Shown here: positions 34,675 through 46,334 of the stretch, one piece after another
How positions within the stretch are numbered: position 1 is the stretch's first letter
Layout of the letters: the number at the start of each line of letters is the position of its first letter
IMG/VR virus record: IMGVR_UViG_3300032334_001259
Span: 62,001-126,000 of that record
Reading direction: 5' to 3' (one strand)
DNA: 64,000 bases
Notes under the pieces: model-generated
Databases searched by the model: none
What the model was told of the DNA's origin: nothing
The model's input: only the letters and a program-made list of their open reading frames with translations
Translations under genes and position numbers: made by a program

Positions 34675-34748
34675 ATCAGTGTGGTGTAATGGTAACACAG
34701 CGGTCTCCAAAACCGTTATTCAGGGTTCGAGTCCTTGCACTGATGCCA
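34675..34748 (+). tRNA. trnW: tRNA-Trp(CCA)
   Basis: Acceptor atcagtg/cactgat; anticodon loop ct-cca-aa; TTCGA T loop; encoded CCA. Confidence 0.92.
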
Positions 34749-34803
34749 AAAATAACATTATTATGACATTGACACGCAATTTAAAAGGATATATAGTTAT
34801 AGG

Positions 34804-35034
34804 ATGGCATCAAGCAAACCGCCCATCATTCCAGATAATACTTGCCCATATATTGATATGGCACAAGACCTTATTAGCCAAATGTCTGCCCAAGAAGATG
34901 CAGAGTGGCGTAAAAAACAAGCAGATTTAGCAGAAAGTTTATTGGAATATATTCGTGCAGCAAATTTAGAGTTGCGTGAAGGCGGAAAGTATTGGTATAA
35001 TCGTGCAAAGAAGGTAGGAAAGGGAACTGTATGA
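34804..35034 (+). CDS. Hypothetical protein
   Basis: 76 aa; PIIPDNTCPYID motif. Confidence 0.6.
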   Translation: MASSKPPIIPDNTCPYIDMAQDLISQMSAQEDAEWRKKQADLAESLLEYIRAANLELREGGKYWYNRAKKVGKGTV

Positions 35035-35678
35035 AAGGCAAGATAGCGATTTTTGTTGATCACCCAAGAGTTAGCATACATGGTGCTAATGGGTTAATGA
35101 ACGCACTTGCTCAAGATTATCAGTTTAAGATTTTTACAAGACATGATCTTCCATATGATGATTGGTGGGATGATGTTGATATCTGTGCCGTGCCAGGTGG
35201 TATTGGTGATTATATGACATTTAATCGTGTTATGAAACATCATATTCCTAAAATTAAAACATTTCTTGACCGTGGTGGTCGTTATCTTGGTATTTGTATG
35301 GGTGCATATTGGGCTGGCAGTATGTTTCTTGATATACTCAAAGGACGTGATTGTGTTCAATATCTTAGACGCCCTAAAACTGATACACGCCGACCACATG
35401 CAAAAGATTTAGAAGTTACTTGGTTAGGTAATAAAGAAAAGATATTTTGGTATGATGGATGTAGCATTATTGGAAAAGGTAAGTTTGATGTTGTTGCCAC
35501 TTACCCCAATGGTGATGCTATGGCAGGTTACCAAGATCGTATTGGTCTTATCGGCAGTCATCCAGAAGCAGAAAAATTCTGGTATGACGAATATACTTGG
35601 TTGAAGCCAAAGTATGTTGGAAAAGAACACAATCATGAACTATTACATGATTTTGTTGATGAACTTATGAAACGCTAA
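35031..35678 (+). CDS. Class I glutamine amidotransferase-like protein (BPL_N type)
   Basis: VPGG, YLGICMGAY nucleophile elbow, SHPE His-x-Glu. Confidence 0.8.
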   Translation: MKGKIAIFVDHPRVSIHGANGLMNALAQDYQFKIFTRHDLPYDDWWDDVDICAVPGGIGDYMTFNRVMKHHIPKIKTFLDRGGRYLGICMGAYWAGSMFLDILKGRDCVQYLRRPKTDTRRPHAKDLEVTWLGNKEKIFWYDGCSIIGKGKFDVVATYPNGDAMAGYQDRIGLIGSHPEAEKFWYDEYTWLKPKYVGKEHNHELLHDFVDELMKR

Positions 35679-35926
35679 TGATAGAATATATTATTGTATT
35701 TTTATCGATGTTTGTCGTGGATGTATTCTATGCAATATATCTAAAAAGCATTGAAAATAACAAACCTATATTTGCCTCTTTTATGGCTACCATTGTGTTT
35801 TTTGTTGCAAGTATCGCAACAATAGGTTATATTGATAATCACTGGTTACTTGTTCCAGCTTGTTTAGGTGCATTTGCTGGCACATGGGTTGGTGTTATGT
35901 ATAATATTAAAAAGAAGAAAAACTAA
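35678..35926 (+). CDS. Small three-helix membrane protein
   Basis: 82 aa with three hydrophobic segments. Confidence 0.65.
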   Translation: MIEYIIVFLSMFVVDVFYAIYLKSIENNKPIFASFMATIVFFVASIATIGYIDNHWLLVPACLGAFAGTWVGVMYNIKKKKN

Positions 35927-35928
35927 TT

Positions 35929-36006
35929 GGGGAAGTGAGTGCGGAATGGTTACGCCAAGGTCTGCAAAACCTGTTCATGTGGGTTCGAGTCCCATCTTCC
36001 CCTCCA
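35929..36006 (+). tRNA. trnC: tRNA-Cys(GCA)
   Basis: ggggaag/cttcccc acceptor; ct-gca-aa loop; U73; CCA. Confidence 0.9.
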
Positions 36007-36169
36007 TTACTGGAGATAAAGAGATAGATTTGTTAATACACAAAACTCGTATGTGCTTGTGTAACAAATACTACAATCAAGTTTATAAGTACATTTCTAT
36101 CTTAGAAACTAAAAATGTTTTCTTTAATGTAGAAAATAATAAAGAATACCAAGAATGGTTACATAATAC

Positions 36170-36244
36170 GGCTCCATCTTATAATGGTTATTATCCTTGA
36201 CTGTCTATCAGGGGATAGGGGTTCGATTCTCCTTGGAGTCGCCA
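36170..36244 (+). tRNA. trnD: tRNA-Asp(GTC)
   Basis: ggctcca/tggagtc acceptor; ct-gtc-ta loop; G73; CCA. Confidence 0.9.
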
Positions 36245-36255
36245 TAAATAACTAT

Positions 36256-36696
36256 ATGGCACTAGATCCTAAATCCGCACAGAAACTTGGTGAAGCATAT
36301 GGCAAAGGCGTCACCGACGCCGTATTTGGTATTGTTGATGATGTTCGCAATGCGAAAAATATCAAAGCATCAAATAATGCAAAGATTGCCGCAAAAAATA
36401 AAATTACAGAAATCAACAATCAAATAATTCGCAATAATAACGCACTGCGTGAACAAGCAATGCGTGAAATTGCGGCAGAAGCAGAAGCAAGTGCATTAGC
36501 AAAAATGACACCTGCACAACGTCAAGCATATAAAGCAACAAAAGAAGCTAATGCCGCAGCAGCACAACGTGCAGCTAAAGAAGCTAAAAGAAAAAGTGAA
36601 GAGTTTTGGCAGTATTTTTGGGCAATTGTGATTGTTCTAGTCTGCATACCAATTTTAGGTGGTGCTGGCTATCTACTACTTAAATTAGCACACTGA
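36256..36696 (+). CDS. Coiled-coil protein with C-terminal transmembrane helix
   Basis: Start moved to ATG 36256 because the upstream part overlaps tRNA-Asp; CATAAATA late promoter at 36243-36250. Confidence 0.65.
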   Translation: MALDPKSAQKLGEAYGKGVTDAVFGIVDDVRNAKNIKASNNAKIAAKNKITEINNQIIRNNNALREQAMREIAAEAEASALAKMTPAQRQAYKATKEANAAAAQRAAKEAKRKSEEFWQYFWAIVIVLVCIPILGGAGYLLLKLAH

Positions 36697-36741
36697 TTTC
36701 AATTATATCAGTATCTCAATTACATCTATAATTTTCCATGT

Positions 36742-36990
36742 TTGGAGATACTGTTGGATATTCTACCACAAACCTACGATATGGCGTGGGGTCCGTGCTA
36801 TTGGCGGATGCATTATTTTTATCATAATGTAAAAGAATACCATTGGACACAATGGGATGCCAGTGCTGATTATAGCAAACAAAGCATTATGAATGCATGG
36901 GTTGAAGCAAAAAACAAAGCTGATCCAACAATACGAATACGTATAACGTGTCAAAATAACAAATATATTATTTTAGATACACGTCCTTAA
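36742..36990 (+). CDS. Hypothetical protein
   Basis: 82-aa ORF with TTG start. Confidence 0.4.
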   Translation: MEILLDILPQTYDMAWGPCYWRMHYFYHNVKEYHWTQWDASADYSKQSIMNAWVEAKNKADPTIRIRITCQNNKYIILDTRP

Positions 36991-36995
36991 TTTAA

Positions 36996-37072
36996 CCGCC
37001 CATAGATAACGCTGGCTATATCACTGCCCTTTCAAGGCAGAGTAACGAGTTCGACACTCGTTGGGCGGACCA
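36996..37072 (+). tRNA. trnE: tRNA-Glu(TTC)
   Basis: ccgccca/tgggcgg acceptor; ctgcc-ct-ttc-aa-ggcag; CCA. Confidence 0.88.
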
Positions 37073-37125
37073 ATTAATTTGCATATTCTAATAATTTTTG
37101 TTATACTTTCATTATAAGGTGTAAC

Positions 37126-37647
37126 ATGAATACAGAAGAATATGCAGCATTTGAAAAAAGTGCAAGACCAATACTAGAAAGCTATCGTGGTAATATTGAT
37201 TATTATGTTGGCACAATGTATGAAGGTTTTTTAAGTCATCCAAATACAGTTCGTGGTAGTATTGGTGAAGCAATTGTTAGTGCAGATATGTCAAGCCGTG
37301 GACATGTTGTAGAAGATCGTATTAATGCTGGTCATGACAGAATTATTGATGGTATTAAAACAGAAATAAAACACGCAATTCAAGGCAAATTTGGTCCAGA
37401 TAGTCATATTATAAATCATATTAGTGCTGATAAAGATTGGGATAGATTAATATTTTATGGTGTAAACCGTCCATTGGAAGATACACGAAGAGTATGGTTT
37501 ACAAAAGAAGATTTTATTGCAAATATTAACAGTGGTATTTTTCGTCGTCAACAAGGTGGACAAGATGGTGGAAATGATGATTATATGGTTAGCAACACAA
37601 GTAAATTATTGTGTCAACCATGGGTTCATGATATTCAAACTTTTTAA
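37126..37647 (+). CDS. PD-(D/E)XK restriction-endonuclease-like protein
   Basis: GSIGEAIV...GHDRIIDGIKTEIK fits the E...D-x5-7-E-x-K pattern. Confidence 0.65.
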   Translation: MNTEEYAAFEKSARPILESYRGNIDYYVGTMYEGFLSHPNTVRGSIGEAIVSADMSSRGHVVEDRINAGHDRIIDGIKTEIKHAIQGKFGPDSHIINHISADKDWDRLIFYGVNRPLEDTRRVWFTKEDFIANINSGIFRRQQGGQDGGNDDYMVSNTSKLLCQPWVHDIQTF

Positions 37648-37722
37648 TGGCGTGTAGCTCAGTGGTAGTAGCACAGTCCTGATAAGACTGGGGTCATTGG
37701 TTCAAATCCAATCATGCCAACC
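37648..37722 (+). tRNA. trnI: tRNA-Ile(GAT)
   Basis: tggcgtg/catgcca acceptor; cagtc-ct-gat-aa-gactg; CCA. Confidence 0.9.
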
Positions 37723-37729
37723 AAATAAA

Positions 37730-37759
37730 AAATGAGAGGAAATTGCTTTCCTCTCATTT
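37730..37759. terminator. Bidirectional terminator
   Basis: aaatgagaggaaa-ttgc-tttcctctcattt perfect stem between convergent units. Confidence 0.7.
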
Positions 37760-37784
37760 ATTGTAGAATAAACTTTTGGGAAAA

Positions 37785-38018
37785 TTACTTCTTCTGCCAA
37801 ATGTTATAGAGAACCCAAATTGCAATCAAGCCTACAAGACCTTCTGATCCAAGACCTTTTACAATTGATGTAACGTTAGCAATAACGTCTACATTTGGAA
37901 GGAATGGGATTGCTACACCCTTGAAAATTACACTAGTAACAATCATAAGTGCTAGTACACTTAATAGAGTGTCAGCAAGTGCTGAAACCCATGATTTAAC
38001 TGTCTTTAAAATATCCAT
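37785..38018 (-). CDS. Small two-helix membrane protein
   Basis: 77 aa with GGAG RBS and two hydrophobic segments. Confidence 0.7.
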   Translation of the reverse strand: MDILKTVKSWVSALADTLLSVLALMIVTSVIFKGVAIPFLPNVDVIANVTSIVKGLGSEGLVGLIAIWVLYNIWQKK

Positions 38019-38069
38019 TTTATACTTCTCCTAATACCTTTTGTCATAAAAAGGTAATAATATTTATTC

Positions 38070-38146
38070 GCTGTTGGGGCGGTTGTGGAAATCGCACCAC
38101 TCTCATAAGGTGGGAAAAGCTGCTTCGAGTGCAGCCAACAGCACCA
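38070..38146 (+). tRNA. tRNA with CAT anticodon (elongator Met or Ile2/lysidine)
   Basis: gctgttg/caacagc acceptor; ccact-ct-cat-aa-ggtgg; CCA; lacks initiator hallmarks. Confidence 0.85.
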
Positions 38147-38174
38147 TAAGCACAAAGCACCAATTAAATATATT

Positions 38175-38633
38175 ATGAAAAGAATTATTCTAATTTGTTT
38201 GTTATTGTCAGGATGCAACACATTACAAAAAACTAGTGTAGATGTTGTTGGAACTGGTTTATCACATCATTTAATTGAACGGACTAATCCTCCTTATAAT
38301 GAAACCAATAGTGGTGTTGGATTAAGACTTAATTTTAATAATGATACTGCAATACAAAGTGGATTTTACAATAACAGCTATAACAACCAAAGCAATTATG
38401 CAATATTAGATTATTCACCATACAAATTATTAAGACAAAATGATTGTGGAAAAATAGATGTAGGTGGTTTTATAGGAGCAGCAACTGGTTATAAAACATA
38501 TCCAGTTCCAGTTGGTGGTATACAAGGTGCAATTCATTGTGGTGATTTTTATGTGCGTTCAAGGGTAACACCAGCACCAATTGCTGGTGCAGTTTTATCC
38601 GTTGAATTTGGCTATACAATTTTTAAATTTTAG
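38175..38633 (+). CDS. Exported small beta-barrel protein, PagP-like
   Basis: Lipobox LSGC; GLSHH...YNETN.G.G...GFYNNSY...SNY...GG..G.ATGY; C-terminal Phe. Confidence 0.55.
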   Translation: MKRIILICLLLSGCNTLQKTSVDVVGTGLSHHLIERTNPPYNETNSGVGLRLNFNNDTAIQSGFYNNSYNNQSNYAILDYSPYKLLRQNDCGKIDVGGFIGAATGYKTYPVPVGGIQGAIHCGDFYVRSRVTPAPIAGAVLSVEFGYTIFKF

Positions 38634-38791
38634 GGACGACCTTGACCACGATAGGTTTTAGTATTGCGACGAACATGTTTATTTTTAGGACGACTTGCCT
38701 TGGCATGACCTATACTGGTACGTTTTTTAACACTTGCTTTTTTAAATGTAACTTTTTGTGCAGCATTACTTCCACCTTTTGCTTTAGCCAT
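38630..38791 (-). CDS. Small very basic protein ending KTYRGQGRP (not in ORF track)
   Basis: AGGAG RBS; MAKAKGGSNAAQKVTFKKASVKKRTSIGHAKASRPKNKHVRRNTKTYRGQGRP, 53 aa. Confidence 0.75.
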   Translation of the reverse strand: MAKAKGGSNAAQKVTFKKASVKKRTSIGHAKASRPKNKHVRRNTKTYRGQGRP

Positions 38792-38849
38792 GGTTGATCT
38801 CCTATTAAAATATTTACATTAAAATTACAAAATGATACATACAAATATT

Positions 38850-38923
38850 GCGGCTATGATGTAGAGGTAACCTGTCTCGTTGCCAACGAGAATTCACCAG
38901 TTCGATTCTGGTTAGCCGCTCCA
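38850..38923 (+). tRNA. trnG: tRNA-Gly(GCC)
   Basis: gcggcta/tagccgc acceptor; tctcg-tt-gcc-aa-cgaga; U73; CCA. Confidence 0.92.
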
Positions 38924-38936
38924 ATTAAATACCTAC

Positions 38937-39548
38937 ATGGAAGATATAGAAGCAATTTCTTGGAAAAATACTCACAAAGAAGATTTATGGGTATTTGATA
39001 AACTAATTATTGCCAAGAAAATGGGTTATACATGTGGTCCTGTAGGAGTTGATGTGCCTAAACCTGGTTTTTACATTGTGCGCCCGTGTGTCAATATACC
39101 AGGCATGGGACGTGGTGCTAAATTGAGACACCTTATTAAACGAACAAAACACTTACCTACTGGACATTTCTGGTGTGAATCATTCAGTGGTAGACATATA
39201 AGCGTTGATTATAAAAATGGTGAACAAGTGTTAGCAGTAGAAGGATTTCGTAGAGACGGTCATCTTTGGCAGTTTTGCAAATGGGAACGTGTAAATGATG
39301 ATTTGCCATTACCAGAAATATTTCACGACGTAATAAATCGTTATGAATATATCAATGTTGAATATATTGGCGGAAAAGTTATAGAAATTCATTTTCGTCA
39401 TAATCCTGATTTTGTATGGGGCAATAGTGTAGCATATCCAGTTTGGGAAAAAATAGATGTGCGACAATTATATCCAGAAGTTGACTTTGATAGTTTAACT
39501 TTTGTATCATCTCCAGATTATAAACGTTTAGGATTTTATATAGATTAA
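38937..39548 (+). CDS. Conserved phage protein, possible ATP-grasp fold
   Basis: DKLII...GY.CGP, YIVRPC.N..GMG.GA, FWCE.F.G.H.S.D, NVEYIGGK.IE.HFRHNPD. Confidence 0.6.
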   Translation: MEDIEAISWKNTHKEDLWVFDKLIIAKKMGYTCGPVGVDVPKPGFYIVRPCVNIPGMGRGAKLRHLIKRTKHLPTGHFWCESFSGRHISVDYKNGEQVLAVEGFRRDGHLWQFCKWERVNDDLPLPEIFHDVINRYEYINVEYIGGKVIEIHFRHNPDFVWGNSVAYPVWEKIDVRQLYPEVDFDSLTFVSSPDYKRLGFYID

Positions 39549-39553
39549 AATAT

Positions 39554-39628
39554 GCTGGTATGGTGTAATAGTTTGCACATAAGGTTGTGGCACTGGTAGA
39601 GTTAGTTCGAATCTAACAGACGGTGCCA
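39554..39628 (+). pseudogene. Degenerate tRNA-His(GTG)-like gene
   Basis: Intact D arm, T arm (gttag-ttcgaat-ctaac), tt-gtg-gc loop and CCA; acceptor and anticodon stems poorly paired. Confidence 0.6.
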
Positions 39629-39671
39629 TTAAAATTTGACTATTGTCAAATATATGATATATTTAAAATAT

Positions 39672-39744
39672 TGCGGGGTAGTGGAAAAGTGCCACGGTTG
39701 GCTCATAACCAACAAAACTGGAGCGTTACCAGCGACCGCAACCA
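39672..39744 (+). tRNA. trnM: tRNA-Met(CAT), initiator-like, atypical T loop
   Basis: tgcgggg...gaccgca-A-CCA; gttgg-ct-cat-aa-ccaac; T loop AGCGTTA. Confidence 0.75.
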
Positions 39745-39750
39745 ATTTAT

Positions 39751-39826
39751 CTCTGTGGAGTTAGGGTAAGATTAATGCGGCACTTGGACTGCCGAGAACC
39801 TGGGGCAGCGCCAGGCACGGAGACCA
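39751..39826 (+). tRNA. trnP: tRNA-Pro(TGG), atypical T loop
   Basis: ctctgtg/cacggag acceptor; cggca-ct-tgg-ac-tgccg; T arm cctgg-GGCAGCG-ccagg; CCA. Confidence 0.8.
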
Positions 39827-39914
39827 TCTAGAAGGCAAGATACACGTATTACTAAGTGGGTGTATCACATCGTGGGCGTGTTGGAGTGGGGCTGCACGAT
39901 GATTAGCTGATTTT

Positions 39915-39998
39915 GGATCGGTTACCGTAGTGGCGAACGGCCTAGGCTTTTAACCTAGTATACAAACATCATGGGTTCGAGTCCCATCCGATCCTCCA
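39915..39998 (+). tRNA. trnK: tRNA-Lys(TTT) with enlarged variable region
   Basis: ggatcgg/ccgatcc acceptor; ctagg-ct-ttt-aa-cctag; 12-nt variable loop; U73; CCA. Confidence 0.85.
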
Positions 39999-40006
39999 AA
40001 AATATG

Positions 40007-40041
40007 GGTAGAGCATAAATATAATAAAAGGATGCTCTACC
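40007..40041 (+). promoter_or_regulatory. Hairpin next to the RBS with an embedded late promoter, upstream of the HNH gene
   Basis: ggtagagcat (40007-40016) pairs with atgctctacc (40032-40041); CATAAATA at 40014-40021; AAAGGA RBS at 40027-40032. Confidence 0.7.
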
Positions 40042-40042
40042 T

Positions 40043-40471
40043 ATGCCAAGTAAAATAAAAAGTTTTTGTAAAAATTGTGGTGTCAGTTTTATACACGGAA
40101 AAAGTTCATATGGAATATATTGTAGTAATAGGTGTCAGGGGGAACTAAAATCTAAAACAATTATAGAAAATTGGTTTAATGGAACAGATAAAGGATATAA
40201 AGTAGGATTTAGAATTAAACCTGCTATAAGAAATTATCTGTTAGAAAAAACTAATTATAGTTGCTCCGAATGTGGGTGGAATAAAATAAACCCAAAAACT
40301 GGAAAATCTCCATTAGAAATTGATCACATTGACGGAGATTGTTCAAATAATAAAGAAGAAAATTTAAGAGTTCTTTGTCCTAATTGCCATTCTTTAACGC
40401 CAACATGGAAAGCATTAAACAAAGGAAATGGAAATAAAGAAAGTCATAGATATTCTGGTCTTATAAAATAA
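40043..40471 (+). mobile_element. Free-standing HNH homing endonuclease gene
   Basis: Zn-ribbon CxxC...YCSNRC; CSECG; LEIDHIDG..SNN.EENLRVLCPNCH. Confidence 0.88.
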
Positions 40472-40548
40472 GCCTACGTAGTTCAATGGATTAGAATGAC
40501 GGTCTTCGAAACCGTGGGTTACAGGTTCAAGTCCTGTTGGGTCTACCA
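40472..40548 (+). pseudogene. Chimeric tRNA-Arg(TCG): duplicated 5' part joined to a foreign T arm/acceptor 3' strand
   Basis: First 49 nt match 41266-41314 with one mismatch; 3' strand tgggtct does not pair with gcctacg. Confidence 0.75.
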
Positions 40549-41223
40549 ATTATTAATATCTTCTTCTATTTCATTAAATCCAACTTGATTTGATTTGGCA
40601 CCCATTTTATGGTTTGCCTTCCACCAATTTTTCCAAACATTATAAATTCTATCTTTATTAAGTGGATTTAAGTTAAAAAATTCAAGAGATTTGTTAATTT
40701 CAATTGTAAATTTATTTCCATTTAAAAACGCAGAGTGTGGAAATTTAAAATAATTTTTATTTTTTTCATCTAAAAATCTGATTAATTCTTTTTCATACTT
40801 AATTTGTGCATCAACCATGTTATCATCTGAACCACTACTTTCTACAAAGTTTCTTCTGAATAAAAGCCATTTAGTTTCTTTTTCATTAGATAAATCCCAA
40901 TCAATGTAAATTAATTTTTCAAAATTTAACCATTCATTAAATGAAAAAAATCTTGGATGAGCTGCTGTTATGTTTTTATGAAATTTACCTTCATATGCTT
41001 TTCTCCATGCAAATTTTGGAATATTAGGTGCTTCTGCTGAATATATTTCATCTAATTTATTAAAAAAATCTGGTCCAAAATACTTCTCACTACAACTTAG
41101 AATATTAGCAAGTAAATGTCCACCAGTCATAGGAAAATAAGCAATTAATAAACTATCTTTGTGTGGTATTCTTTGAACAGAAAGTAAATTTTCAATAGGA
41201 GTAAATGGCCATGTGTTTATCAT
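40543..41223 (-). CDS. Hypothetical protein, sulfotransferase-like P-loop fold
   Basis: 226 aa, very AT-rich; IAYFPMTGGHLLANIL resembles a PAPS-binding/P-loop start; flanked by the tRNA-Arg repeats. Confidence 0.55.
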   Translation of the reverse strand: MINTWPFTPIENLLSVQRIPHKDSLLIAYFPMTGGHLLANILSCSEKYFGPDFFNKLDEIYSAEAPNIPKFAWRKAYEGKFHKNITAAHPRFFSFNEWLNFEKLIYIDWDLSNEKETKWLLFRRNFVESSGSDDNMVDAQIKYEKELIRFLDEKNKNYFKFPHSAFLNGNKFTIEINKSLEFFNLNPLNKDRIYNVWKNWWKANHKMGAKSNQVGFNEIEEDINNW

Positions 41224-41265
41224 GCAATATTTAATTTAAATATTTTATCTAATAAAAAAATAATT

Positions 41266-41342
41266 GCCTACGTAGTTCAATGGATAAGAATGACGGTCTT
41301 CGAAACCGTGGGTTGGGGGTTCGAATCCCTCCGTAGGCTCCA
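41266..41342 (+). tRNA. trnR: tRNA-Arg(TCG)
   Basis: gcctacg/cgtaggc acceptor; acggt-ct-tcg-aa-accgt; CCA. Confidence 0.9.
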
Positions 41343-41352
41343 AAAAATAATG

Positions 41353-41382
41353 CTTGACATAATTGTAAAGTTGATATATATT
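41353..41382 (+). promoter_or_regulatory. Sigma70-type promoter for the distal tRNAs
   Basis: CTTGACA-17 nt-TATATT. Confidence 0.6.
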
Positions 41383-41399
41383 ATGAATATAATAGTTAT

Positions 41400-41475
41400 T
41401 CCCGAATAGCTCAACTGGCAGAGCACAGTGCTGTTAACACTGGGGTTACTTGTTCGAATCAAGTTTCGGGAGCCA
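41400..41475 (+). tRNA. trnN: tRNA-Asn(GTT)
   Basis: tcccgaa/ttcggga acceptor; cagtg-ct-gtt-aa-cactg; G73; CCA. Confidence 0.92.
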
Positions 41476-41480
41476 CTTTT

Positions 41481-42107
41481 TTAAAACGCTAATGGATAAA
41501 AATACCAAATACCATCAGCAAGTAGGGCAAGTCCAACTAAACCTACAGCAATACTACCGCCCCATAACAGTATGTTAGCACCAAGTATAGCAGTAGTGCT
41601 TAATACAATTGCAATTTGAAATGCCGTACTTGCCAATCCAAATAGTGGATTACGTTGTTTAGCAGCATCACGTTCTGCTTCAAGTTCTCGTGCTTCTGCC
41701 ATAATTTCTTTTTTTCCATGACCTTTTGGATCACTTTCAAGTTTATCAATAACGGCTTGATAACGTGATGCACGTTCTGCTAATATCTTTTTAACATTTG
41801 CTGGTGTAGATGGGTCTTCTAGTTGTGCTTTAGTATCTTCTAAATCTACATAATATAAGTTTTGTTTAATGCTTTTTGCTTGATAAAAAGCCCATGCATT
41901 TGTTACTTCTATATTTGTTTCCATAATTCTTGTAGCATTTTTACCACCAAAAAGTGTGCATACCGATAATATCATTGCAAATACGGTAATGGTAATTGTA
42001 GAAAGTTTTCTTATCTTTGCTTCTTTATCAGCAAGTTTATCTATATCACCTTCTTTACGAGTTTTAAGATATGTGTTTACAGTGTTTTGAAATTGTTTGA
42101 TGTCCAT
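41481..42107 (-). CDS. DUF4337-like membrane protein
   Basis: TM helix, NAWAFYQAKSIKQ, coiled coil, two C-terminal TM helices; start moved to MDIKQF because the longer ORF overlaps tRNA-Leu. Confidence 0.7.
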   Translation of the reverse strand: MDIKQFQNTVNTYLKTRKEGDIDKLADKEAKIRKLSTITITVFAMILSVCTLFGGKNATRIMETNIEVTNAWAFYQAKSIKQNLYYVDLEDTKAQLEDPSTPANVKKILAERASRYQAVIDKLESDPKGHGKKEIMAEARELEAERDAAKQRNPLFGLASTAFQIAIVLSTTAILGANILLWGGSIAVGLVGLALLADGIWYFYPLAF

Positions 42108-42156
42108 GGTATTTTTCTCTTGACTATATGTGATATTTAGGATATATATAATACAT

Positions 42157-42234
42157 GCCCTACTAGCCCAACTGGTTAGAGGTGCTTGCCTTAGAAGCAA
42201 GAGGTTCTCCGTTCGAATCGGAGGTGGGGCACCA
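42157..42234 (+). tRNA. trnL: tRNA-Leu(TAG) without a long variable arm
   Basis: gccctac/gtggggc acceptor; cttgc-ct-tag-aa-gcaag; 5-nt variable loop; A73; CCA. Confidence 0.85.
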
Positions 42235-42236
42235 AT

Positions 42237-42310
42237 GCCGCCATAGTATAATGGTATTACAGTGGATTAGTAACCCTCTGACGGAAGTTCGATTCTTTCT
42301 GGCGGCACCA
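42237..42310 (+). tRNA. trnT: tRNA-Thr(AGT)
   Basis: gccgcca/tggcggc acceptor; loop tt-agt-aa; anticodon stem only 3/5 paired; CCA. Confidence 0.7.
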
Positions 42311-42314
42311 TATA

Positions 42315-42398
42315 GGAAGATAGCGAGCAAGGTGCTCAAACCGTCTTGAAAACGGTGCCACCGAAAGGTTGATGGTTCGATTCCTTTATCTTCCGCCA
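42315..42398 (+). tRNA. trnS: tRNA-Ser(TGA)
   Basis: ggaagat/atcttcc acceptor; accgt-ct-tga-aa-acggt; long variable arm; G73; CCA. Confidence 0.9.
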
Positions 42399-42402
42399 TA
42401 AT

Positions 42403-42476
42403 GCGGAGTTGGCATATTGGTTGTGCTCCAGCCTTCCAAGCTGGCTAAACGAGTTCGATTCTCGTACTCCGCTCCA
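42403..42476 (+). tRNA. trnG: tRNA-Gly(TCC)
   Basis: gcggagt/actccgc acceptor; ccagc-ct-tcc-aa-gctgg; U73; CCA. Confidence 0.93.
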
Positions 42477-43321: not shown

Positions 43322-43791
43322 GATGATTTTAATCCTTTTAACATTGCTTTGATCCAAGTTGGATGTGTATCAAAATCAAGTTCTTCCGTGATATATTTTG
43401 ACCAAAAATCTGCATCTTGTGTATCTACACGGAAATAATAACTGCCTGGTTCTGGTGGAACAAACATCTTATTTGTATCCTCAAACCTACCTTCTTTAAT
43501 TGTATCAACCCAAATAACAGTAGCAGGCCCAAAGGCCGCACGAGTGGCAGCTGTGGGACATACAAAATCTGCAATTGCCCATGAACCTGCTTCTGTAACT
43601 TGATCACATAGCCAACCCATTCTACGGGCTTGCTCTATGCGATCACTTTCACTAAAACCAAGATGGCTATTAATATTTGCACGAACAGCATCTGCGTTCC
43701 AATGAACTGCTTTAAGTTTAGGAGCCAAGGCTTTTGCCAGAGTGGTTTTACCCGACCCTGGCAAGCCCATTATTAATATTTTCTTGTTCAT
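43318..43791 (-). CDS. cysC: Adenylylsulfate (APS) kinase-like protein
   Basis: GLPGSGKTT, NADAVR, LGFSESDRIEQARR, FVCPT..TR match CysC motifs. Confidence 0.8.
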   Translation of the reverse strand: MNKKILIMGLPGSGKTTLAKALAPKLKAVHWNADAVRANINSHLGFSESDRIEQARRMGWLCDQVTEAGSWAIADFVCPTAATRAAFGPATVIWVDTIKEGRFEDTNKMFVPPEPGSYYFRVDTQDADFWSKYITEELDFDTHPTWIKAMLKGLKSS

Positions 43792-45245
43792 GCAGATGTT
43801 GTTACAAGTTTTTTACGAGTTACATTACTAACAACATAGCAAAGTGCACCACTACCGAATACTTCAATTAATACAGCAAGTGCCATTATGCTTGGACCAC
43901 CGCCGAAAAACTGACCATAGATGTAAAGTGGAATACCAATGAATACTCCTACTGCACTACCAGCAAGGAATCCTTGACGAGTAAGGAAGTCGCCAGCCAT
44001 AAGTGCAAGAATAATTGGAATAGCAAAAGTAAGCATTAATGCCTTGCCCCACATAAACAATACGTTAAGATCAAGACCTGGCATATTAGCTAAACCAACA
44101 CCAATAGCAGCTACTACAACCATTGCAATGCGTCCCCAATAAATTGGATCTTTTCCGTTGAATCCATCGTGAACATCATTACCAATAAGGTTTGCAGCAC
44201 TTACCATTTGTGTATCAATAATGCTTACAAGACCAGCAAATACAACGGCAAGATAAAGAAGTGGCAACCAAGTGCCAACTACATTTGCCATAACCATAAG
44301 GTTAATAAACTGTGTTTGTGGACCACTTACATCATAGTGCAAACCTGCACCAAGCATACCTAACATACCACCAACAACTGGTAGAATCGTCCAATAAAAT
44401 GGTGCCATAATAAATGCCTTACGAACATCTTTTTGTTCAATGCTAAAAGCATTTTGATAAGCTGCATTATCAGTCCATGGTGTTGCAAGATGACCCAAAA
44501 CTGTAGGTAAACCAAAACCAAGGAAAAGTCCAGTAGTAAATGCATCACCCCAAAGTGCGATACCATTACCTGTCTTACCACCAATACCTGCGGCTACTGG
44601 TTCAAATCCAGTTGTACCAAATACAGCGATAGCAACAGTTAATAATACTGCCCAAATTACACCAATTTTAACGATATCAGTTGCAACAGTAGCCTTTTGT
44701 CCACCACGCAAACTGTAGACAAGCGCAATTACAACAAGCAGAATGCTCACTGTAAAAGCATTAAGACCTGTTAACAATTCAACGCTTCTGCTACCAGCAA
44801 AAAGATTGATTGTCATACCTTGCAACATGTATAGAGTTGCAGCCGCAAATACACAATATTGAACAGCACGACCGTATTTGCTTCGGAACCATTGGCTTAA
44901 TGTAAAACCATTAGGATTATCTTGTCTAATTTTATTAGCACCGTAACTAAAAAGTATAAGTGCAAAAAAATTACCAAGACTAAACCAAAATACGCCAGCA
45001 ATACCGTTGTTAAAGCCTTGCTGTGCGGCAACAAACAAACCTGGTGCCCAAATCCACGCAGCACCACTACTCAAACTTCCTTGCCAAAAACCTAACTTAC
45101 GATTAGCAACAAGAAAAGATTCTTTGGTCTTATTGAAGCCTTTGGCAAACCAACTTGTAAGCCAAAAAACAAACAATGCATATAGACCAATTACCAATAG
45201 TCCAGTTTCTTGACTGAAAATTGGAAAAATTTTAGTTACATCCAT
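43788..45245 (-). CDS. Na+/solute symporter (SSS; PutP/Dur3-like)
   Basis: About 13 TM helices; SFLVANR, S..AAWIWA..L, YS..GG.KA...TD, AGLVS.ID. Confidence 0.88.
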   Translation of the reverse strand: MDVTKIFPIFSQETGLLVIGLYALFVFWLTSWFAKGFNKTKESFLVANRKLGFWQGSLSSGAAWIWAPGLFVAAQQGFNNGIAGVFWFSLGNFFALILFSYGANKIRQDNPNGFTLSQWFRSKYGRAVQYCVFAAATLYMLQGMTINLFAGSRSVELLTGLNAFTVSILLVVIALVYSLRGGQKATVATDIVKIGVIWAVLLTVAIAVFGTTGFEPVAAGIGGKTGNGIALWGDAFTTGLFLGFGLPTVLGHLATPWTDNAAYQNAFSIEQKDVRKAFIMAPFYWTILPVVGGMLGMLGAGLHYDVSGPQTQFINLMVMANVVGTWLPLLYLAVVFAGLVSIIDTQMVSAANLIGNDVHDGFNGKDPIYWGRIAMVVVAAIGVGLANMPGLDLNVLFMWGKALMLTFAIPIILALMAGDFLTRQGFLAGSAVGVFIGIPLYIYGQFFGGGPSIMALAVLIEVFGSGALCYVVSNVTRKKLVTTSA

Positions 45246-45257
45246 TTTATTTTCCTT

Positions 45258-46334
45258 TTAATTGAAATAATCTATTAATTCGCCATCTCTGTTAAGGTCA
45301 CATGTTATACAATGTATACCTCCACTCCAGAAATAACGATTTCTGTAATGAGAGACGTGAACATTTATACCATGTTTTTCTAACTCATCACAAATTCTTT
45401 TATTGTAATTGAATACAATTACATTATTCTCATCAATGCTTAACATATTACAGTCAAATACGTTATCCATCATGTATTTCTGCCAACCATTATCTAACCA
45501 TTCATTAGCAAGAGCAGCACGAGCAGCATCTCCTTCTTCACCATAGTTCCATAGGTTATGATTATGTTTTTGTTTGAATCCTAAGAACTTATACATGCTT
45601 ACCAAACTGTCACTGCCATCTGTAGTAATAACCTTCCAGTTTGGAAAATCTTTTGCATATTTTTCACTTCCCATAACACTAACGATAAGACCTGGTTTAA
45701 GTGGACGATACCAACTGTCACGCCAACCTATTTCATCGTATATAATATTCTCATAACCTTCACCAAATTCAGAAACAAATTGTTGAAATTCATTATGTGA
45801 TCCATATCTTTGAAATGGTCCACCATTTCCATATGTCATACGTTTGCCAATTTTGGTCATCCAACCTTCACTGTTTATTTGTGTTTTAGTATGATAAACA
45901 GAATTTCCTTGCGCTTTAACATATTCAACAATATTTTGATATTGAGCATATTGTTCTGGTTCAATAAACCAGTGGATGAATTTATCACCCATCATCATGA
46001 TCCAGTCACGAGGCTGCAGTGGGGGTGGCACTATACACTCGGCTGTGGGATATTCTGTGTATTGTAATGGTAATACAAATTGATCATACCATACTCGTGA
46101 CTGGATTCTCTTTTTGAAATCTGCGTTAGTATCAACCGTGGGACGTATGGTTTTTACACCAAATGATTGTAGCAGTCTTTCTAAATTTTGATAGTCTTCT
46201 TCTGTTTCATATGCTATTTGTTCATAACGACGGCGGACATCAATATCTTTTATAAAACTATAAAATTCTGGTGCATAGGTGCGACCAATTACACAATTTT
46301 TTAATGGTTGAAATAAGCAATGCTTTTCGAACAC
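45258..46334 (-). CDS. Amidinotransferase-family (pentein) protein
   Basis: QPRD, KPGLI, N.LSIDE..V and C-terminal GGIHC.TCD with the nucleophile Cys; the usual H-x-D reads W-R-D. Confidence 0.8.
   Translation of the reverse strand: MFEKHCLFQPLKNCVIGRTYAPEFYSFIKDIDVRRRYEQIAYETEEDYQNLERLLQSFGVKTIRPTVDTNADFKKRIQSRVWYDQFVLPLQYTEYPTAECIVPPPLQPRDWIMMMGDKFIHWFIEPEQYAQYQNIVEYVKAQGNSVYHTKTQINSEGWMTKIGKRMTYGNGGPFQRYGSHNEFQQFVSEFGEGYENIIYDEIGWRDSWYRPLKPGLIVSVMGSEKYAKDFPNWKVITTDGSDSLVSMYKFLGFKQKHNHNLWNYGEEGDAARAALANEWLDNGWQKYMMDNVFDCNMLSIDENNVIVFNYNKRICDELEKHGINVHVSHYRNRYFWSGGIHCITCDLNRDGELIDYFN

What the first reader, a model, noticed from the sequence alone, without database searches (positions are those of the whole stretch)
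40472..41342. tRNA-Arg 49-bp direct repeats bracket an antisense AT-rich gene, leaving a chimeric tRNA
40472-40520 and 41266-41314 are identical except for one base. The first copy continues into a different T arm and acceptor (acaggttcaagtcctgttgggtctacca) that cannot pair with its 5' end. This looks like the footprint of an integrase-free cassette insertion or recombination in a tRNA gene that brought in the 226-aa sulfotransferase-like ORF, possibly driven by the adjacent HNH. It may be excisable by homologous recombination.
Basis: partly seen in the sequence, partly recalled or inferred. Interest (0 to 1): 0.6.

Follow-up and report, generated by a model that had tools for sequence, protein, structure and literature searches.

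The report
Dead hybrid tRNA beside homing endonuclease
In the tRNA gene array of an uncultured 338-kb freshwater phage, one "tRNA-Arg" is a dead hybrid: the front of tRNA-Arg joined to the tail of a lost tRNA-Lys. It is a recombination scar at the edge of a mobile homing-endonuclease module, an instructive but fairly ordinary trace of how such selfish genes reshuffle phage genomes.

Summary
Window 40472-40520 and 41266-41314 match at 48 of 49 bases. Copy 2 is a normal tRNA-Arg(UCG). Copy 1 has a foreign T arm and acceptor that cannot pair with its own 5' end.

The donor of that foreign end is now identified. It is the last 28 nt of a 76-nt tRNA-Lys(UUU) ("Lys76"). In relative L004, Lys76 lies 5 bp upstream of tRNA-Arg, and the match is 28/28. 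The joint is in structural register, at a shared GGTT in the variable loop.

Relatives show that the sulfotransferase-fold ORF226 already occupies the Lys-Arg spacer, without any repeats. So the event did not bring ORF226 in.

What is new in this phage is a module made of an 84-nt tRNA-Lys allele ("Lys84") plus an HNH gene.
- The HNH is 89-95% identical to copies in relatives whose flanking proteins are only 42-72% identical.
- In all three lineages that carry the module, it has displaced the 5' part of resident Lys76.
- Each of those lineages keeps a 3' Lys76 remnant right after the HNH stop codon.

Best explanation: non-allelic recombination between tRNA-Arg and Lys76, probably during repair of an HNH-made break. 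The product is a pseudo-tRNA scar.

No excision junction was seen, but only contigs, not raw reads, were available. I rate this a new variant of a known kind, of moderate interest.

The parts
39751..39826 (+). Non-canonical tRNA-Pro(UGG)-like gene. It is conserved upstream of tRNA-Lys(UUU) in relatives and is the likely left homology arm for exchange.
   Evidence: 90-93% identical in L009, L010, L013, L017 and L024. Cloverleaf with 2 compensatory pairs. Not called by ARAGORN or Rfam.
39858..39998 (+). Leader plus the 84-nt tRNA-Lys(UUU) allele 'Lys84' (gene 39915-39998), which has a 13-nt unpaired variable region. It is the only tRNA-Lys(UUU) in the genome.
   Evidence: ARAGORN and Rfam. 84/84 identical in L009, L016 and L022. 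The block is 86-93% identical in L009, L011, L020, L016 and L022. No other Lys(UUU) in G000.
40003..40045 (+). 14-bp hairpin covering the ribosome-binding region and start codon of the HNH gene.
   Evidence: Energy -18.9 kcal/mol, z = -5.8, 0 of 200 shuffles as good. Kept in L022 and L016, with one C-G to U-A double change in L016.
40043..40471 (+). Free-standing HNH homing-endonuclease gene (142 aa). Its stop codon TAA abuts base 1 of the chimeric tRNA.
   Evidence: Pfam HNH and HNH_3 at threshold, PHROG 10822 at 3e-17. 95% and 89% aa identity to L022 and L016, against 42-72% for neighbouring proteins (ORF203 72%, ORF226 42%, DUF4337 52-54%). The family sits in tRNA arrays, with its stop 0-4 nt before a tRNA in several members.
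40472..40520 (+). 5' part of the chimera: tRNA-Arg(UCG) nt 1-49 (acceptor 5' strand, D arm, anticodon arm, variable loop). GGTT at 40517-40520 is the shared microhomology.
   Evidence: 49/49 identical to L004 tRNA-Arg and 48/49 to window copy 2.
40521..40548 (+). 3' part of the chimera: T arm, acceptor 3' strand, discriminator and CCA of the resident 76-nt tRNA-Lys(UUU) (L004-type Lys76). It also supplies the last codon (Trp) and the stop codon of ORF226 on the other strand.
   Evidence: 28/28 identical to L004 9194-9221, the 3' end of an intact tRNA-Lys(UUU). ORF226 end is at 40543.
40543..41223 (-). ORF226, a sulfotransferase-fold protein of a phage-only family. It is the resident cargo of the Lys-Arg spacer.
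   Evidence: Homologues at the same place in L010, L026, L017-19 and L016/L027. AlphaFold2 pLDDT 80. All top structural matches are sulfotransferases, with Z about 10 and about 182 residues aligned. Atlas neighbours agree. No Pfam or PHROG hit.
41260..41342 (+). ATAATT spacer plus intact tRNA-Arg(UCG) (41266-41342), which is copy 2 of the repeat.
   Evidence: The spacer TAATT directly follows Lys76 in L004. The X2 joint 40547->41260 shows the ORF226-free form.

Best explanation
Copy 1 is a dead hybrid tRNA gene. Bases 1-49 come from tRNA-Arg(UCG). They are joined, in structural register at a shared GGTT in the variable loop, to the last 28 bases of the phage's former 76-nt tRNA-Lys(UUU) gene (Lys76).

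The hybrid marks the right-hand edge of a mobile module. The module consists of an alternative 84-nt tRNA-Lys(UUU) (Lys84), a regulatory hairpin and a free-standing HNH homing-endonuclease gene.

The likeliest history is a cross between two close relatives.
- One parent was organised Lys84-HNH-Arg, which is the L009 order plus the HNH.
- The other was organised Lys76-ORF226(antisense)-Arg, which is the L010 order with L004-type alleles.
- The HNH cut the second genome in or near Lys76.
- The left side of the break was repaired by ordinary homology upstream of the Lys gene.
- The right side was resolved non-allelically. The T-arm region of Lys76 paired with the similar T-arm region of the donor's tRNA-Arg, and the joint formed at GGTT.

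The product keeps Lys84, HNH, ORF226 and an intact tRNA-Arg, and carries one pseudo-tRNA.

What is shown: the composition of the hybrid, its register, the mosaic boundaries, the mobility signature of the HNH, and Lys76 remnants in all three HNH-bearing lineages. What is inferred: that an HNH cut started the event, where that cut falls, and who the two parents were.
For: 1. Donor identified. The 28-nt foreign end is 28/28 identical to the 3' end of an intact tRNA-Lys(UUU), which in L004 lies 5 bp upstream of tRNA-Arg(UCG).
2. The Arg part is 49/49 identical to L004 Arg. The joint is in register (49+28 = 77 nt) at GGTT, inside a stretch where 13 of 19 positions match between the two tRNAs. The ten Arg(UCG) alleles compared (nine relatives plus window copy 2) show GGTT at this position only in the window, L004 and L016. 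Lys76 shows it only in L004.
3. Mosaic structure. Window 38925-39747 is about 90% identical to L004. Window 39736-40470 is 86% identical to L016, and 39858-40470 is 92% identical to L022. Homology to both ends at 40470, the middle base of the HNH stop codon (40469-40471).
4. In L016/L027 and L022 the HNH stop codon is followed at once by a 19-nt 3' remnant of Lys76. It is 19/19 identical to the L010-type allele in L016. So in all three HNH lineages Lys76 is truncated and Lys84 lies 44-45 nt upstream of the HNH.
5. G000 has no intact Lys76.
6. L009 shows the HNH-free site, Lys84 - 7 nt - Arg.
7. The HNH is 89-95% identical in amino acids across lineages whose neighbouring proteins are 42-72% identical (ORF203 72%, ORF226 42%, DUF4337 52-54%).
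8. Most of the 25 fetched loci with a related HNH place it inside a tRNA array. In the eight of those loci where I read the sequence after a full-length ORF (L032, L035, L037, L038, L039, L040, L046, L047), the stop codon lies 0-4 nt before the next tRNA.
9. ORF226 homologues occupy the Lys-Arg spacer in relatives without any repeat.
10. Precedent. T4 SegB sits in a tRNA cluster and recognises the T-psi-C motif of tRNA genes (PMC2330249). One-sided homing in T4 gives illegitimate joints at microhomologies (PMC2988022). SegB-dependent rearrangements use microhomology at a tRNA 5' end (PMC13096335).
Against: - Neither proposed parent was found. There was no contig with HNH directly followed by an intact Arg. 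There was no L004-type Lys76 followed by this ORF226.
- The HNH cleavage site is unknown, and the protein only just reaches Pfam's thresholds.
- The right-hand joints differ between lineages: variable loop here, T loop in L016/L022. A single fixed cut-and-paste site is therefore not demonstrated.
- The only other carrier, L003, is 100% identical to the window, so there is a single evolutionary observation of this chimera.
- The link between HNH presence and loss of intact Lys76 rests on 3 lineages against 9 (about p = 0.09 by my own count).
Confidence: 0.6

Rival explanations
1. Segmental (tandem) duplication came first. In an ancestor organised Lys76-ORF226-Arg, the 794-bp unit from the Lys76 T arm to Arg nt 49 was duplicated at the GGTT microhomology, as in SegB-type amplification. 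That would create the Arg/Lys76 joint and two ORF226 copies. Later the Lys84-HNH module replaced everything upstream of the hybrid.
For: A tandem duplication of exactly this unit predicts exactly this new joint (my own reasoning). Homing-endonuclease-dependent tandem amplification in a phage tRNA array, with microhomology joints, is documented for T6 SegB (PMC13096335). The one-base difference between the copies fits a recent duplication.
Against: It needs two further events, one of which must end precisely at base 1 of the hybrid. There is no second ORF226 copy and no intact Lys76 in the genome. No relative shows the duplicated intermediate.
Confidence: 0.15
2. Non-allelic recombination between tRNA-Arg and Lys76 happened during ordinary phage recombination or replication (template switching) and had nothing to do with the HNH. 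The endonuclease gene simply sits next to the scar.
For: tRNA arrays offer many short similar stretches. The joint needs only 4 nt of identity inside 13/19 similarity. The Lys-Arg spacer is a variable slot in many relatives that have no HNH.
Against: The Arg-derived part starts at the base right after the HNH stop codon, and homology to the HNH-bearing relatives ends at the middle base of that stop codon. Both other HNH lineages also have a truncated Lys76 directly after the HNH. None of the HNH-free relatives examined shows a Lys76 or Arg fragment at this position.
Confidence: 0.15
3. The hybrid is a working RNA: an unusual tRNA-Arg read in a shifted register, or a processing or termination signal kept for ORF226 or HNH expression.
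For: It still passes Rfam's tRNA threshold at 46.4 bits, and ARAGORN finds a 6-of-7 acceptor in a register shifted by 2 nt. This phage group does carry non-canonical tRNA-like genes. The remnant supplies ORF226's final codon and stop codon.
Against: The canonical acceptor has only 1 Watson-Crick pair of 7. The shifted register needs 4 nt between the acceptor and the D stem. I estimate the chance of such pairing at about 0.01 per register. The single-strand fold is no better than shuffles, z = -0.09. The group's non-canonical tRNAs all keep well-paired acceptor stems, whereas this one does not. There is no independent lineage in which to test conservation.
Confidence: 0.07
4. Assembly artefact: the two copies were joined wrongly.
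For: Repeats in metagenome assemblies can cause chimeric joins. The only supporting data are contigs, one set of them possibly from the source sample.
Against: The longest exact shared stretch is 28 nt, shorter than usual assembly word sizes. The same sequence appears in a second IMG/VR record and in a 2,525-nt Logan contig spanning both copies with no differences. Each half of the hybrid has a sensible origin in relatives.
Confidence: 0.03

Closest known systems
T4/T6 SegB, a GIY-YIG homing endonuclease in the T-even tRNA gene cluster (PMC2330249; PMC13096335)
   Same: Both are free-standing homing-endonuclease genes embedded in a phage tRNA array. Their spread carries neighbouring tRNA genes along and erases the recipient's tRNA markers. 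SegB recognises the conserved T-psi-C stem-loop motif of tRNA genes, and its rearrangement joints use microhomology at tRNA ends. Here the joints lie at the variable-loop/T-stem border (window) and in the T loop (L016, L022).
   Different: The nuclease family differs (HNH with two zinc-finger-like CxxC pairs, not GIY-YIG). There is no sequence relationship. Cleavage was not tested here. The scar is a single in-register hybrid of two different tRNA genes, not a tandem array. The module carries a replacement tRNA-Lys of unusual build.
One-sided, illegitimate double-strand-break repair during T4 intron homing (Parker et al. 1999, as summarised in PMC2988022)
   Same: Homology on one side of the break is enough for homing. 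The other side is joined at short microhomologies, after resection, creating new junctions and duplications.
   Different: That case was shown with engineered T4 td-intron donors. Here it is inferred from a natural genome, the endonuclease is free-standing rather than intron-encoded, and the microhomology is guided by the general similarity of two tRNA genes.
Integrase-mediated insertion into tRNA genes (prophages and genomic islands with att sites in tRNA 3' halves)
   Same: In both, a direct repeat of part of a tRNA gene brackets inserted DNA, with one intact and one partial tRNA copy.
   Different: There is no integrase here. The repeated part is the 5' 49 nt, not the 3' end. The partial copy is fused to another tRNA's 3' end. 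The bracketed gene is resident in relatives, not imported.
Cytosolic and bacterial PAPS-dependent sulfotransferases (PF00685/PF13469), compared with ORF226
   Same: The overall fold matches: Z about 10, about 182 of 226 residues aligned, and all top 50 structural matches are sulfotransferases. A glycine-rich loop after strand 1 and invariant His and Arg are present in the family alignment.
   Different: There is no significant sequence match to any Pfam, PHROG or PDB sequence. The lysine of the 5'-phosphosulfate-binding loop is absent in all seven family members. Activity is unknown.

Membership tests
tRNA (Rfam RF00005), copy 1 at 40472-40548 | Covariance-model score above the gathering threshold | tested here: met
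   46.4 bits against a threshold of 29. The score comes from the D, anticodon and T arms.
tRNA (functional gene), copy 1 | 7-bp acceptor stem between the 5' end and the 3' end, with 2 nt before the D stem | tested here: not met
   The canonical register has 1 Watson-Crick pair, 3 G-U pairs and 3 mismatches. ARAGORN's alternative shifts 2 nt into the HNH stop codon and leaves 4 nt before the D stem.
tRNA (functional gene), copy 2 at 41266-41342 | Full cloverleaf with a paired acceptor stem and the expected anticodon | tested here: met
   68.1 bits, 7/7 acceptor pairs, anticodon UCG.
HNH homing endonuclease (free-standing) | HNH nuclease motif with metal-binding cysteines | tested here: met
   Pfam HNH 21.4 bits against a cut-off of 21.4. 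HNH_3 24.5 bits against 24.8. PHROG 10822 at 3e-17. DH...N...H and CxxC pairs are visible in the sequence.
HNH homing endonuclease (free-standing) | Patchy distribution, and much higher similarity than the flanking genes (a sign of horizontal spread) | tested here: met
   Present in 3 of about 12 related lineages. 89-95% aa identity against 42-72% for neighbouring proteins.
HNH homing endonuclease (free-standing) | Site-specific cleavage of the endonuclease-free allele, and biased inheritance in crosses | not testable with these tools
   Needs purified protein and a cultivable host or a plasmid assay.
Integrase-type tRNA-gene insertion (att repeats) | Tyrosine or serine recombinase gene within the bracketed DNA or next to it | tested here: not met
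   The only genes here are the HNH and ORF226. There is no recombinase domain.
Integrase-type tRNA-gene insertion (att repeats) | The repeat is the 3' part of the tRNA gene, and the bracketed DNA is absent from empty sites | tested here: not met
   The repeat is the 5' 49 nt. ORF226 homologues are present in relatives without repeats.
SegB-type segmental amplification | Tandem head-to-tail repeat units that include the amplified gene in two or more copies | tested here: not met
   Only the 49-nt Arg part is repeated. ORF226 and the HNH are single-copy in the 338-kb genome.
Sulfotransferase (PF00685/PF13469), ORF226 | Sequence match to the family profile | tested here: not met
   No Pfam hit at E <= 1 for any of 7 family members.
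Sulfotransferase (PF00685/PF13469), ORF226 | Sulfotransferase fold | tested here: met
   Model pLDDT 80 and pTM 0.80. VIA-align Z 10.3, rmsd 3.6-3.8 over about 182 residues. Foldseek best E 3.7e-3. Atlas structural neighbours carry PF00685/PF13469.
Sulfotransferase (PF00685/PF13469), ORF226 | 5'-phosphosulfate-binding loop with its conserved lysine | tested here: inconclusive
   A glycine-rich loop is present at residues 31-37, but no member has lysine at the expected place. I judged this by eye, with the motif recalled from general knowledge.

The most novel reading that the evidence does not exclude
The Lys84 + HNH unit may be a 'replace-and-destroy' selfish module. Its endonuclease would target the ordinary tRNA-Lys(UUU) gene of related phages near the variable loop or T arm. 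The module would survive because it carries its own tRNA-Lys, whose enlarged 13-nt variable region makes the gene uncuttable. That variant tRNA might also escape host tRNA-cutting defences.

The canonical/non-canonical pairs seen in this phage group (Lys76/Lys84, Arg/ncArg, Pro/ncPro, Met/ncMet) would then be products of an arms race over tRNA genes. In that race, homing nucleases drive turnover and leave hybrid or truncated tRNA scars.
Probability: 0.2. Interest if true: 0.7.

Novelty: new variant of a known kind. Interest (0 to 1): 0.4.

Why it matters
Homing endonucleases are known to shuffle phage tRNA clusters, but natural molecular scars that show how a single event resolved are rare.

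This one is unusually legible. Both halves of the hybrid can be traced base for base to alleles in a close relative. The joint is in register at a 4-nt microhomology. Two other lineages carry the same module with a different truncation of the same tRNA-Lys gene.

It therefore gives a natural example of homing with one-sided homology in an uncultured jumbo phage. It also points to a testable target, the ordinary tRNA-Lys(UUU) gene, for an uncharacterised family of HNH genes associated with tRNA arrays.

There is a practical lesson for annotation. ARAGORN and Rfam both call this pseudogene a tRNA-Arg, while missing several conserved non-canonical tRNA-like genes next to it.

Tried and rejected
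- **Search for the proposed donor.** An exact-pattern scan of JGI metagenome contigs for the HNH-stop/Arg-start joint found nothing. A second scan with the HNH 3' end found only the known L016/L027 contigs and one chance match, L055, which has no HNH and no tRNA.
- **IMG/VR scans.** Scans for the 28-nt end and the 49-nt repeat found only L003 (the same strain) and L004. A protein scan with ORF226 found only the same strain. Its distant homologues came from tblastn on loci fetched through the DUF4337 neighbour.
- **Named phages.** blastn of the region against GenBank phages gave only short tRNA or HNH matches and no related named phage.
- **Read-level test for excision.** Only Logan contigs were on offer, with no raw reads and no RNA runs. 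No 794-bp skip was seen. The X1 joint 40543->41311 has only 22 nt on one side and a depth unlike the phage, so I discounted it as another organism's tRNA.
- **ORF226 by sequence.** Pfam, PHROGs and PDB sequence profiles gave nothing. Only structure comparison was informative.
- **A withdrawn reading.** I first took the L011/L020 match to window 41314 onward as an Arg 3' remnant with the same breakpoint. Reading the sequence showed a complete non-canonical tRNA-Arg-like gene instead.
- **Not run.** I did not use the large protein searches, because the claim does not rest on absence of relatives. I did not use complex prediction, because no binding claim is made.
Full report
**Setting.** The window is bases 62001-126000 of a 338,435-bp IMG/VR virus record with direct terminal repeats. 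Runs holding parts of it are freshwater, pond and lake metagenomes. ARAGORN finds 23 tRNA genes and one tmRNA-like gene in the genome. Fifteen of the tRNA genes lie in the window, in an array at 34675-42476 interspersed with small ORFs. No named phage in GenBank is close.

Window 40472-40520 and 41266-41314 are identical at 48 of 49 positions, the difference being T at 40492 against A at 41286.
- Copy 2 (41266-41342) is a textbook tRNA-Arg(UCG) scoring 68.1 bits.
- Copy 1 (40472-40548) has a different T arm and acceptor 3' strand. In the normal register its acceptor has one Watson-Crick pair, three G-U pairs and three mismatches.
- ARAGORN reports copy 1 only by sliding the 5' strand two bases into the HNH stop codon and leaving four bases before the D stem. 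Its Rfam score is 46.4 bits, and its fold is no better than shuffles.
- The same sequence occurs in a second IMG/VR record, L003, which is 100% identical to the window over 12,060 nt.
- A 2,525-nt Logan contig of run X1 spans both copies without a difference. X1 may be the source sample, so independence is limited. The longest exact shared stretch is only 28 nt, which makes an assembly error unlikely.

**The donor of the foreign end.** An exact search of IMG/VR for the 28-nt end found L003 and one informative relative, L004.
- L004 has a compact array: His - Met - Pro - Lys(UUU) - TAATT - Arg(UCG) - Asn.
- The 28 nt are exactly the T arm, acceptor 3' strand, discriminator and CCA of that 76-nt tRNA-Lys(UUU), here called Lys76.
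- The 49-nt Arg part of copy 1 is 49/49 identical to L004's tRNA-Arg.
- Both genes read GGTT at the end of the variable loop, and the joint lies there. The hybrid is in structural register, at 49 + 28 = 77 nt.
- The region around the joint matches at 13 of 19 positions between the two tRNAs.
- I compared ten Arg(UCG) alleles (nine relatives plus window copy 2). GGTT at this position occurs only in the window, L004 and L016. Among Lys76 alleles, only L004's has it.
- Both halves therefore come from alleles of the window/L004 clade.
- The genome has no intact Lys76 and no second copy of the 28-mer.

**What relatives show.** Using the conserved DUF4337 neighbour (window 41481-42110, minus strand) I fetched 22 related loci and scanned their tRNAs. 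The order Lys(UUU) - Arg(UCG) - Asn - DUF4337 - Leu - Thr - Ser - Gly is conserved. The Lys-Arg spacer varies.
- It is 5-7 nt in L004, L009, L013-15 and L024.
- It holds an antisense ORF226 homologue (29-42% aa identity) in L010, L026, L017-19 and L016/L027.
- It holds three unrelated ORFs in L022.
- None of the relatives with an ORF226 homologue shows a repeat or a hybrid tRNA.

ORF226 is therefore resident cargo of a variable slot, not something the repeat-forming event imported. A contig in pond run X2 joins 40547 to 41260, which is the ORF226-free form seen in L004.

**The mobile element is on the other side.** tRNA-Lys(UUU) comes in two builds. One is the 76-nt form. The other is an 84-nt form with a 13-nt unpaired variable region, Lys84. 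Lys84 is 84/84 identical in the window, L009, L016 and L022.
- Close homologues of the HNH (89-95% aa identity) occur only in the window, L016/L027 and L022, each 44-45 nt downstream of Lys84.
- In the same genome pairs, the neighbouring proteins are only 42-72% identical: ORF203 72%, ORF226 42%, DUF4337 52-54%. This is the signature of recent horizontal spread.
- The window is a mosaic. Positions 38925-39747 are about 90% identical to L004. Positions 39736-40470 are 86% identical to L016, and 39858-40470 are 92% identical to L022. Homology to both ends at 40470, the middle base of the HNH stop codon at 40469-40471.
- In L016/L027 and L022 the HNH stop codon is followed at once by a 19-nt 3' remnant of Lys76, running from the T loop to CCA. 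In L016 it is 19/19 identical to the L010-type allele.
- So in all three HNH-bearing lineages the 5' part of Lys76 is gone, a 3' piece remains, and Lys84 supplies the function.
- L009 shows the HNH-free version of the left-hand layout: Lys84 - 7 nt - Arg. The window's left part is that layout with the hairpin and HNH inserted between Lys84 and Arg.

**The HNH family.** Most of the 25 IMG/VR loci with a related HNH place it inside a phage tRNA array. In the eight of those loci where I read the sequence after a full-length ORF (L032, L035, L037, L038, L039, L040, L046, L047), the stop codon lies 0-4 nt before the next tRNA gene. A TAA directly abutting base 1 of an Arg sequence is thus the family's usual arrangement.

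A 14-bp hairpin (40003-40045, z = -5.8) covers the ribosome-binding region and start codon. It is kept in L022 and L016, with one compensatory C-G to U-A change in L016. Hairpin control of translation is known for T4 homing-endonuclease genes. That comparison comes from my general knowledge.

**Mechanism.** The simplest history is one non-allelic joint between two close relatives.
- Parent A was organised Lys84 - HNH - Arg.
- Parent B was organised Lys76 - ORF226 - Arg.
- The product is A up to Arg nt 49, then B from the Lys76 T arm onward.

I think repair of an HNH-made break in or near Lys76 is the most likely occasion, for four reasons:
- the Arg piece begins right after the HNH stop codon;
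- the other two HNH lineages also have Lys76 truncated next to the HNH;
- the joints lie at the variable-loop/T-stem border (window) and in the T loop (L016, L022);
- there are close precedents.

The precedents are these. T4 SegB lies in a tRNA cluster and recognises the T-psi-C motif of tRNA genes, and its spread erases the recipient's tRNA markers (PMC2330249). Homing with homology on one side only gives illegitimate joints at microhomologies (PMC2988022). SegB-dependent rearrangements in T6 use microhomology at a tRNA 5' end (PMC13096335).

The cut itself, its position and the identity of the parents are inferred. Neither parent was found in IMG/VR or JGI contigs.

**Rivals.**
- Duplication first. 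A tandem duplication of the 794-bp unit would create the same joint, but it then needs a replacement ending exactly at base 1 of the hybrid. The genome has only one ORF226.
- Recombination unrelated to the HNH. This is possible but does not explain the coincidence of boundaries in three lineages.
- A working RNA. This is unlikely because the acceptor stem is lost, whereas the non-canonical tRNA-like genes of this group keep theirs.
- Assembly artefact. This is unlikely for the reasons given under the observation.

**Excision.** Recombination between the 49-bp repeats would delete the Lys76 remnant and ORF226, leaving HNH followed by an intact tRNA-Arg. No such joint appeared in the contigs of four runs. 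Raw reads were not available, and contigs drop rare variants, so this is untested.

**ORF226.**
- It is a real protein family. Seven members align, with invariant Gly, Ser, His and Arg.
- It has no Pfam, PHROG or PDB sequence match.
- An AlphaFold2 model (pLDDT 80, pTM 0.80) matches only sulfotransferases at the top of the list. VIA-align gives Z 10.3 with rmsd 3.6-3.8 over about 182 residues, and Foldseek's best E-value is 3.7e-3.
- Atlas neighbours are phage hypothetical proteins and PF00685/PF13469 clusters.
- The lysine of the phosphosulfate-binding loop is absent, so activity is open.
- On the opposite strand, its last codon and stop codon lie in the CCA and acceptor end of the Lys76 remnant. 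That may help explain why the remnant is retained.

**Verdict.** The locus is a recombination scar at the edge of a homing-endonuclease module that swaps one tRNA-Lys allele for another. It is a new variant of a known kind of event and of moderate interest.

The more novel reading is a nuclease that destroys the ordinary tRNA-Lys gene while carrying an uncuttable replacement. That reading is not excluded. It gains some colour from known host defences that cut tRNA-Lys(UUU) and from phage variants that escape them (PMC12409363). It is unproven.

Noticed in passing
window 39751-39826: Non-canonical tRNA-Pro(UGG)-like gene with an odd T loop (GGCAGCG), missed by ARAGORN and Rfam. It is 90-93% identical in relatives whose proteins are about 50% identical. 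It folds as a cloverleaf with two compensatory pairs. In other relatives a canonical tRNA-Pro occupies the same place.
   Followed up: partly
window 39672-39747: tRNA-Met-like element (CAU anticodon loop) with a non-standard T loop (AGCGUUA), not called by ARAGORN or Rfam. It is 93.5% identical in L010 (6954-7030). L004 has a canonical tRNA-Met at this place.
   Followed up: partly
window 39554-39628: tRNA-His-like sequence. Its 3' half is identical to L004's tRNA-His, but its 5' half differs and no longer pairs. Rfam gives 22.4 bits, below threshold. ARAGORN finds no tRNA-His anywhere in the 338-kb genome. This may be a second hybrid or decayed tRNA.
   Followed up: partly
window 39915-39998: The 84-nt tRNA-Lys(UUU) has a 13-nt unstructured variable region, unusual for a Lys tRNA. 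It is base-for-base identical in phages whose proteins are only about 52-62% identical.
   Followed up: partly
L011 5770-5840; L020 5470-5545; L022 6469-6583; L021 4457-4571: A non-canonical tRNA-Arg(UCG)-like gene with a perfect 7-bp acceptor, no D arm and a 20-nt variable region. The acceptor sequence differs between lineages but stays fully paired. In L021 and L022 it is preceded by 26 nt of the canonical tRNA-Arg 5' end, another tRNA remnant at an allele replacement.
   Followed up: partly
window 40003-40045: A strong hairpin (z = -5.8) covers the HNH ribosome-binding region and start codon. It is conserved in L016 and L022 with a compensatory change.
   Followed up: partly
window 43788-45245 (-), 35031-35678 (+), 45258-46334 (-): Cell-like genes next to the tRNA array of a phage: a sodium:solute symporter family protein (E 1.4e-13), a protein with a biotin-protein-ligase N-terminal-like domain (E 1.7e-11), and a weak arginine-deiminase-like match.
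   Followed up: no
G000:C1:330-694 (outside the window): ARAGORN reports a tmRNA-like gene with a tag peptide near the genome end.
   Followed up: no
L016 8883-9680; L021 1846-2613: Paralogues of the ORF226 family (19-27% identity) occur elsewhere in the tRNA arrays of relatives, so the family is recurrent cargo of these arrays.
   Followed up: no
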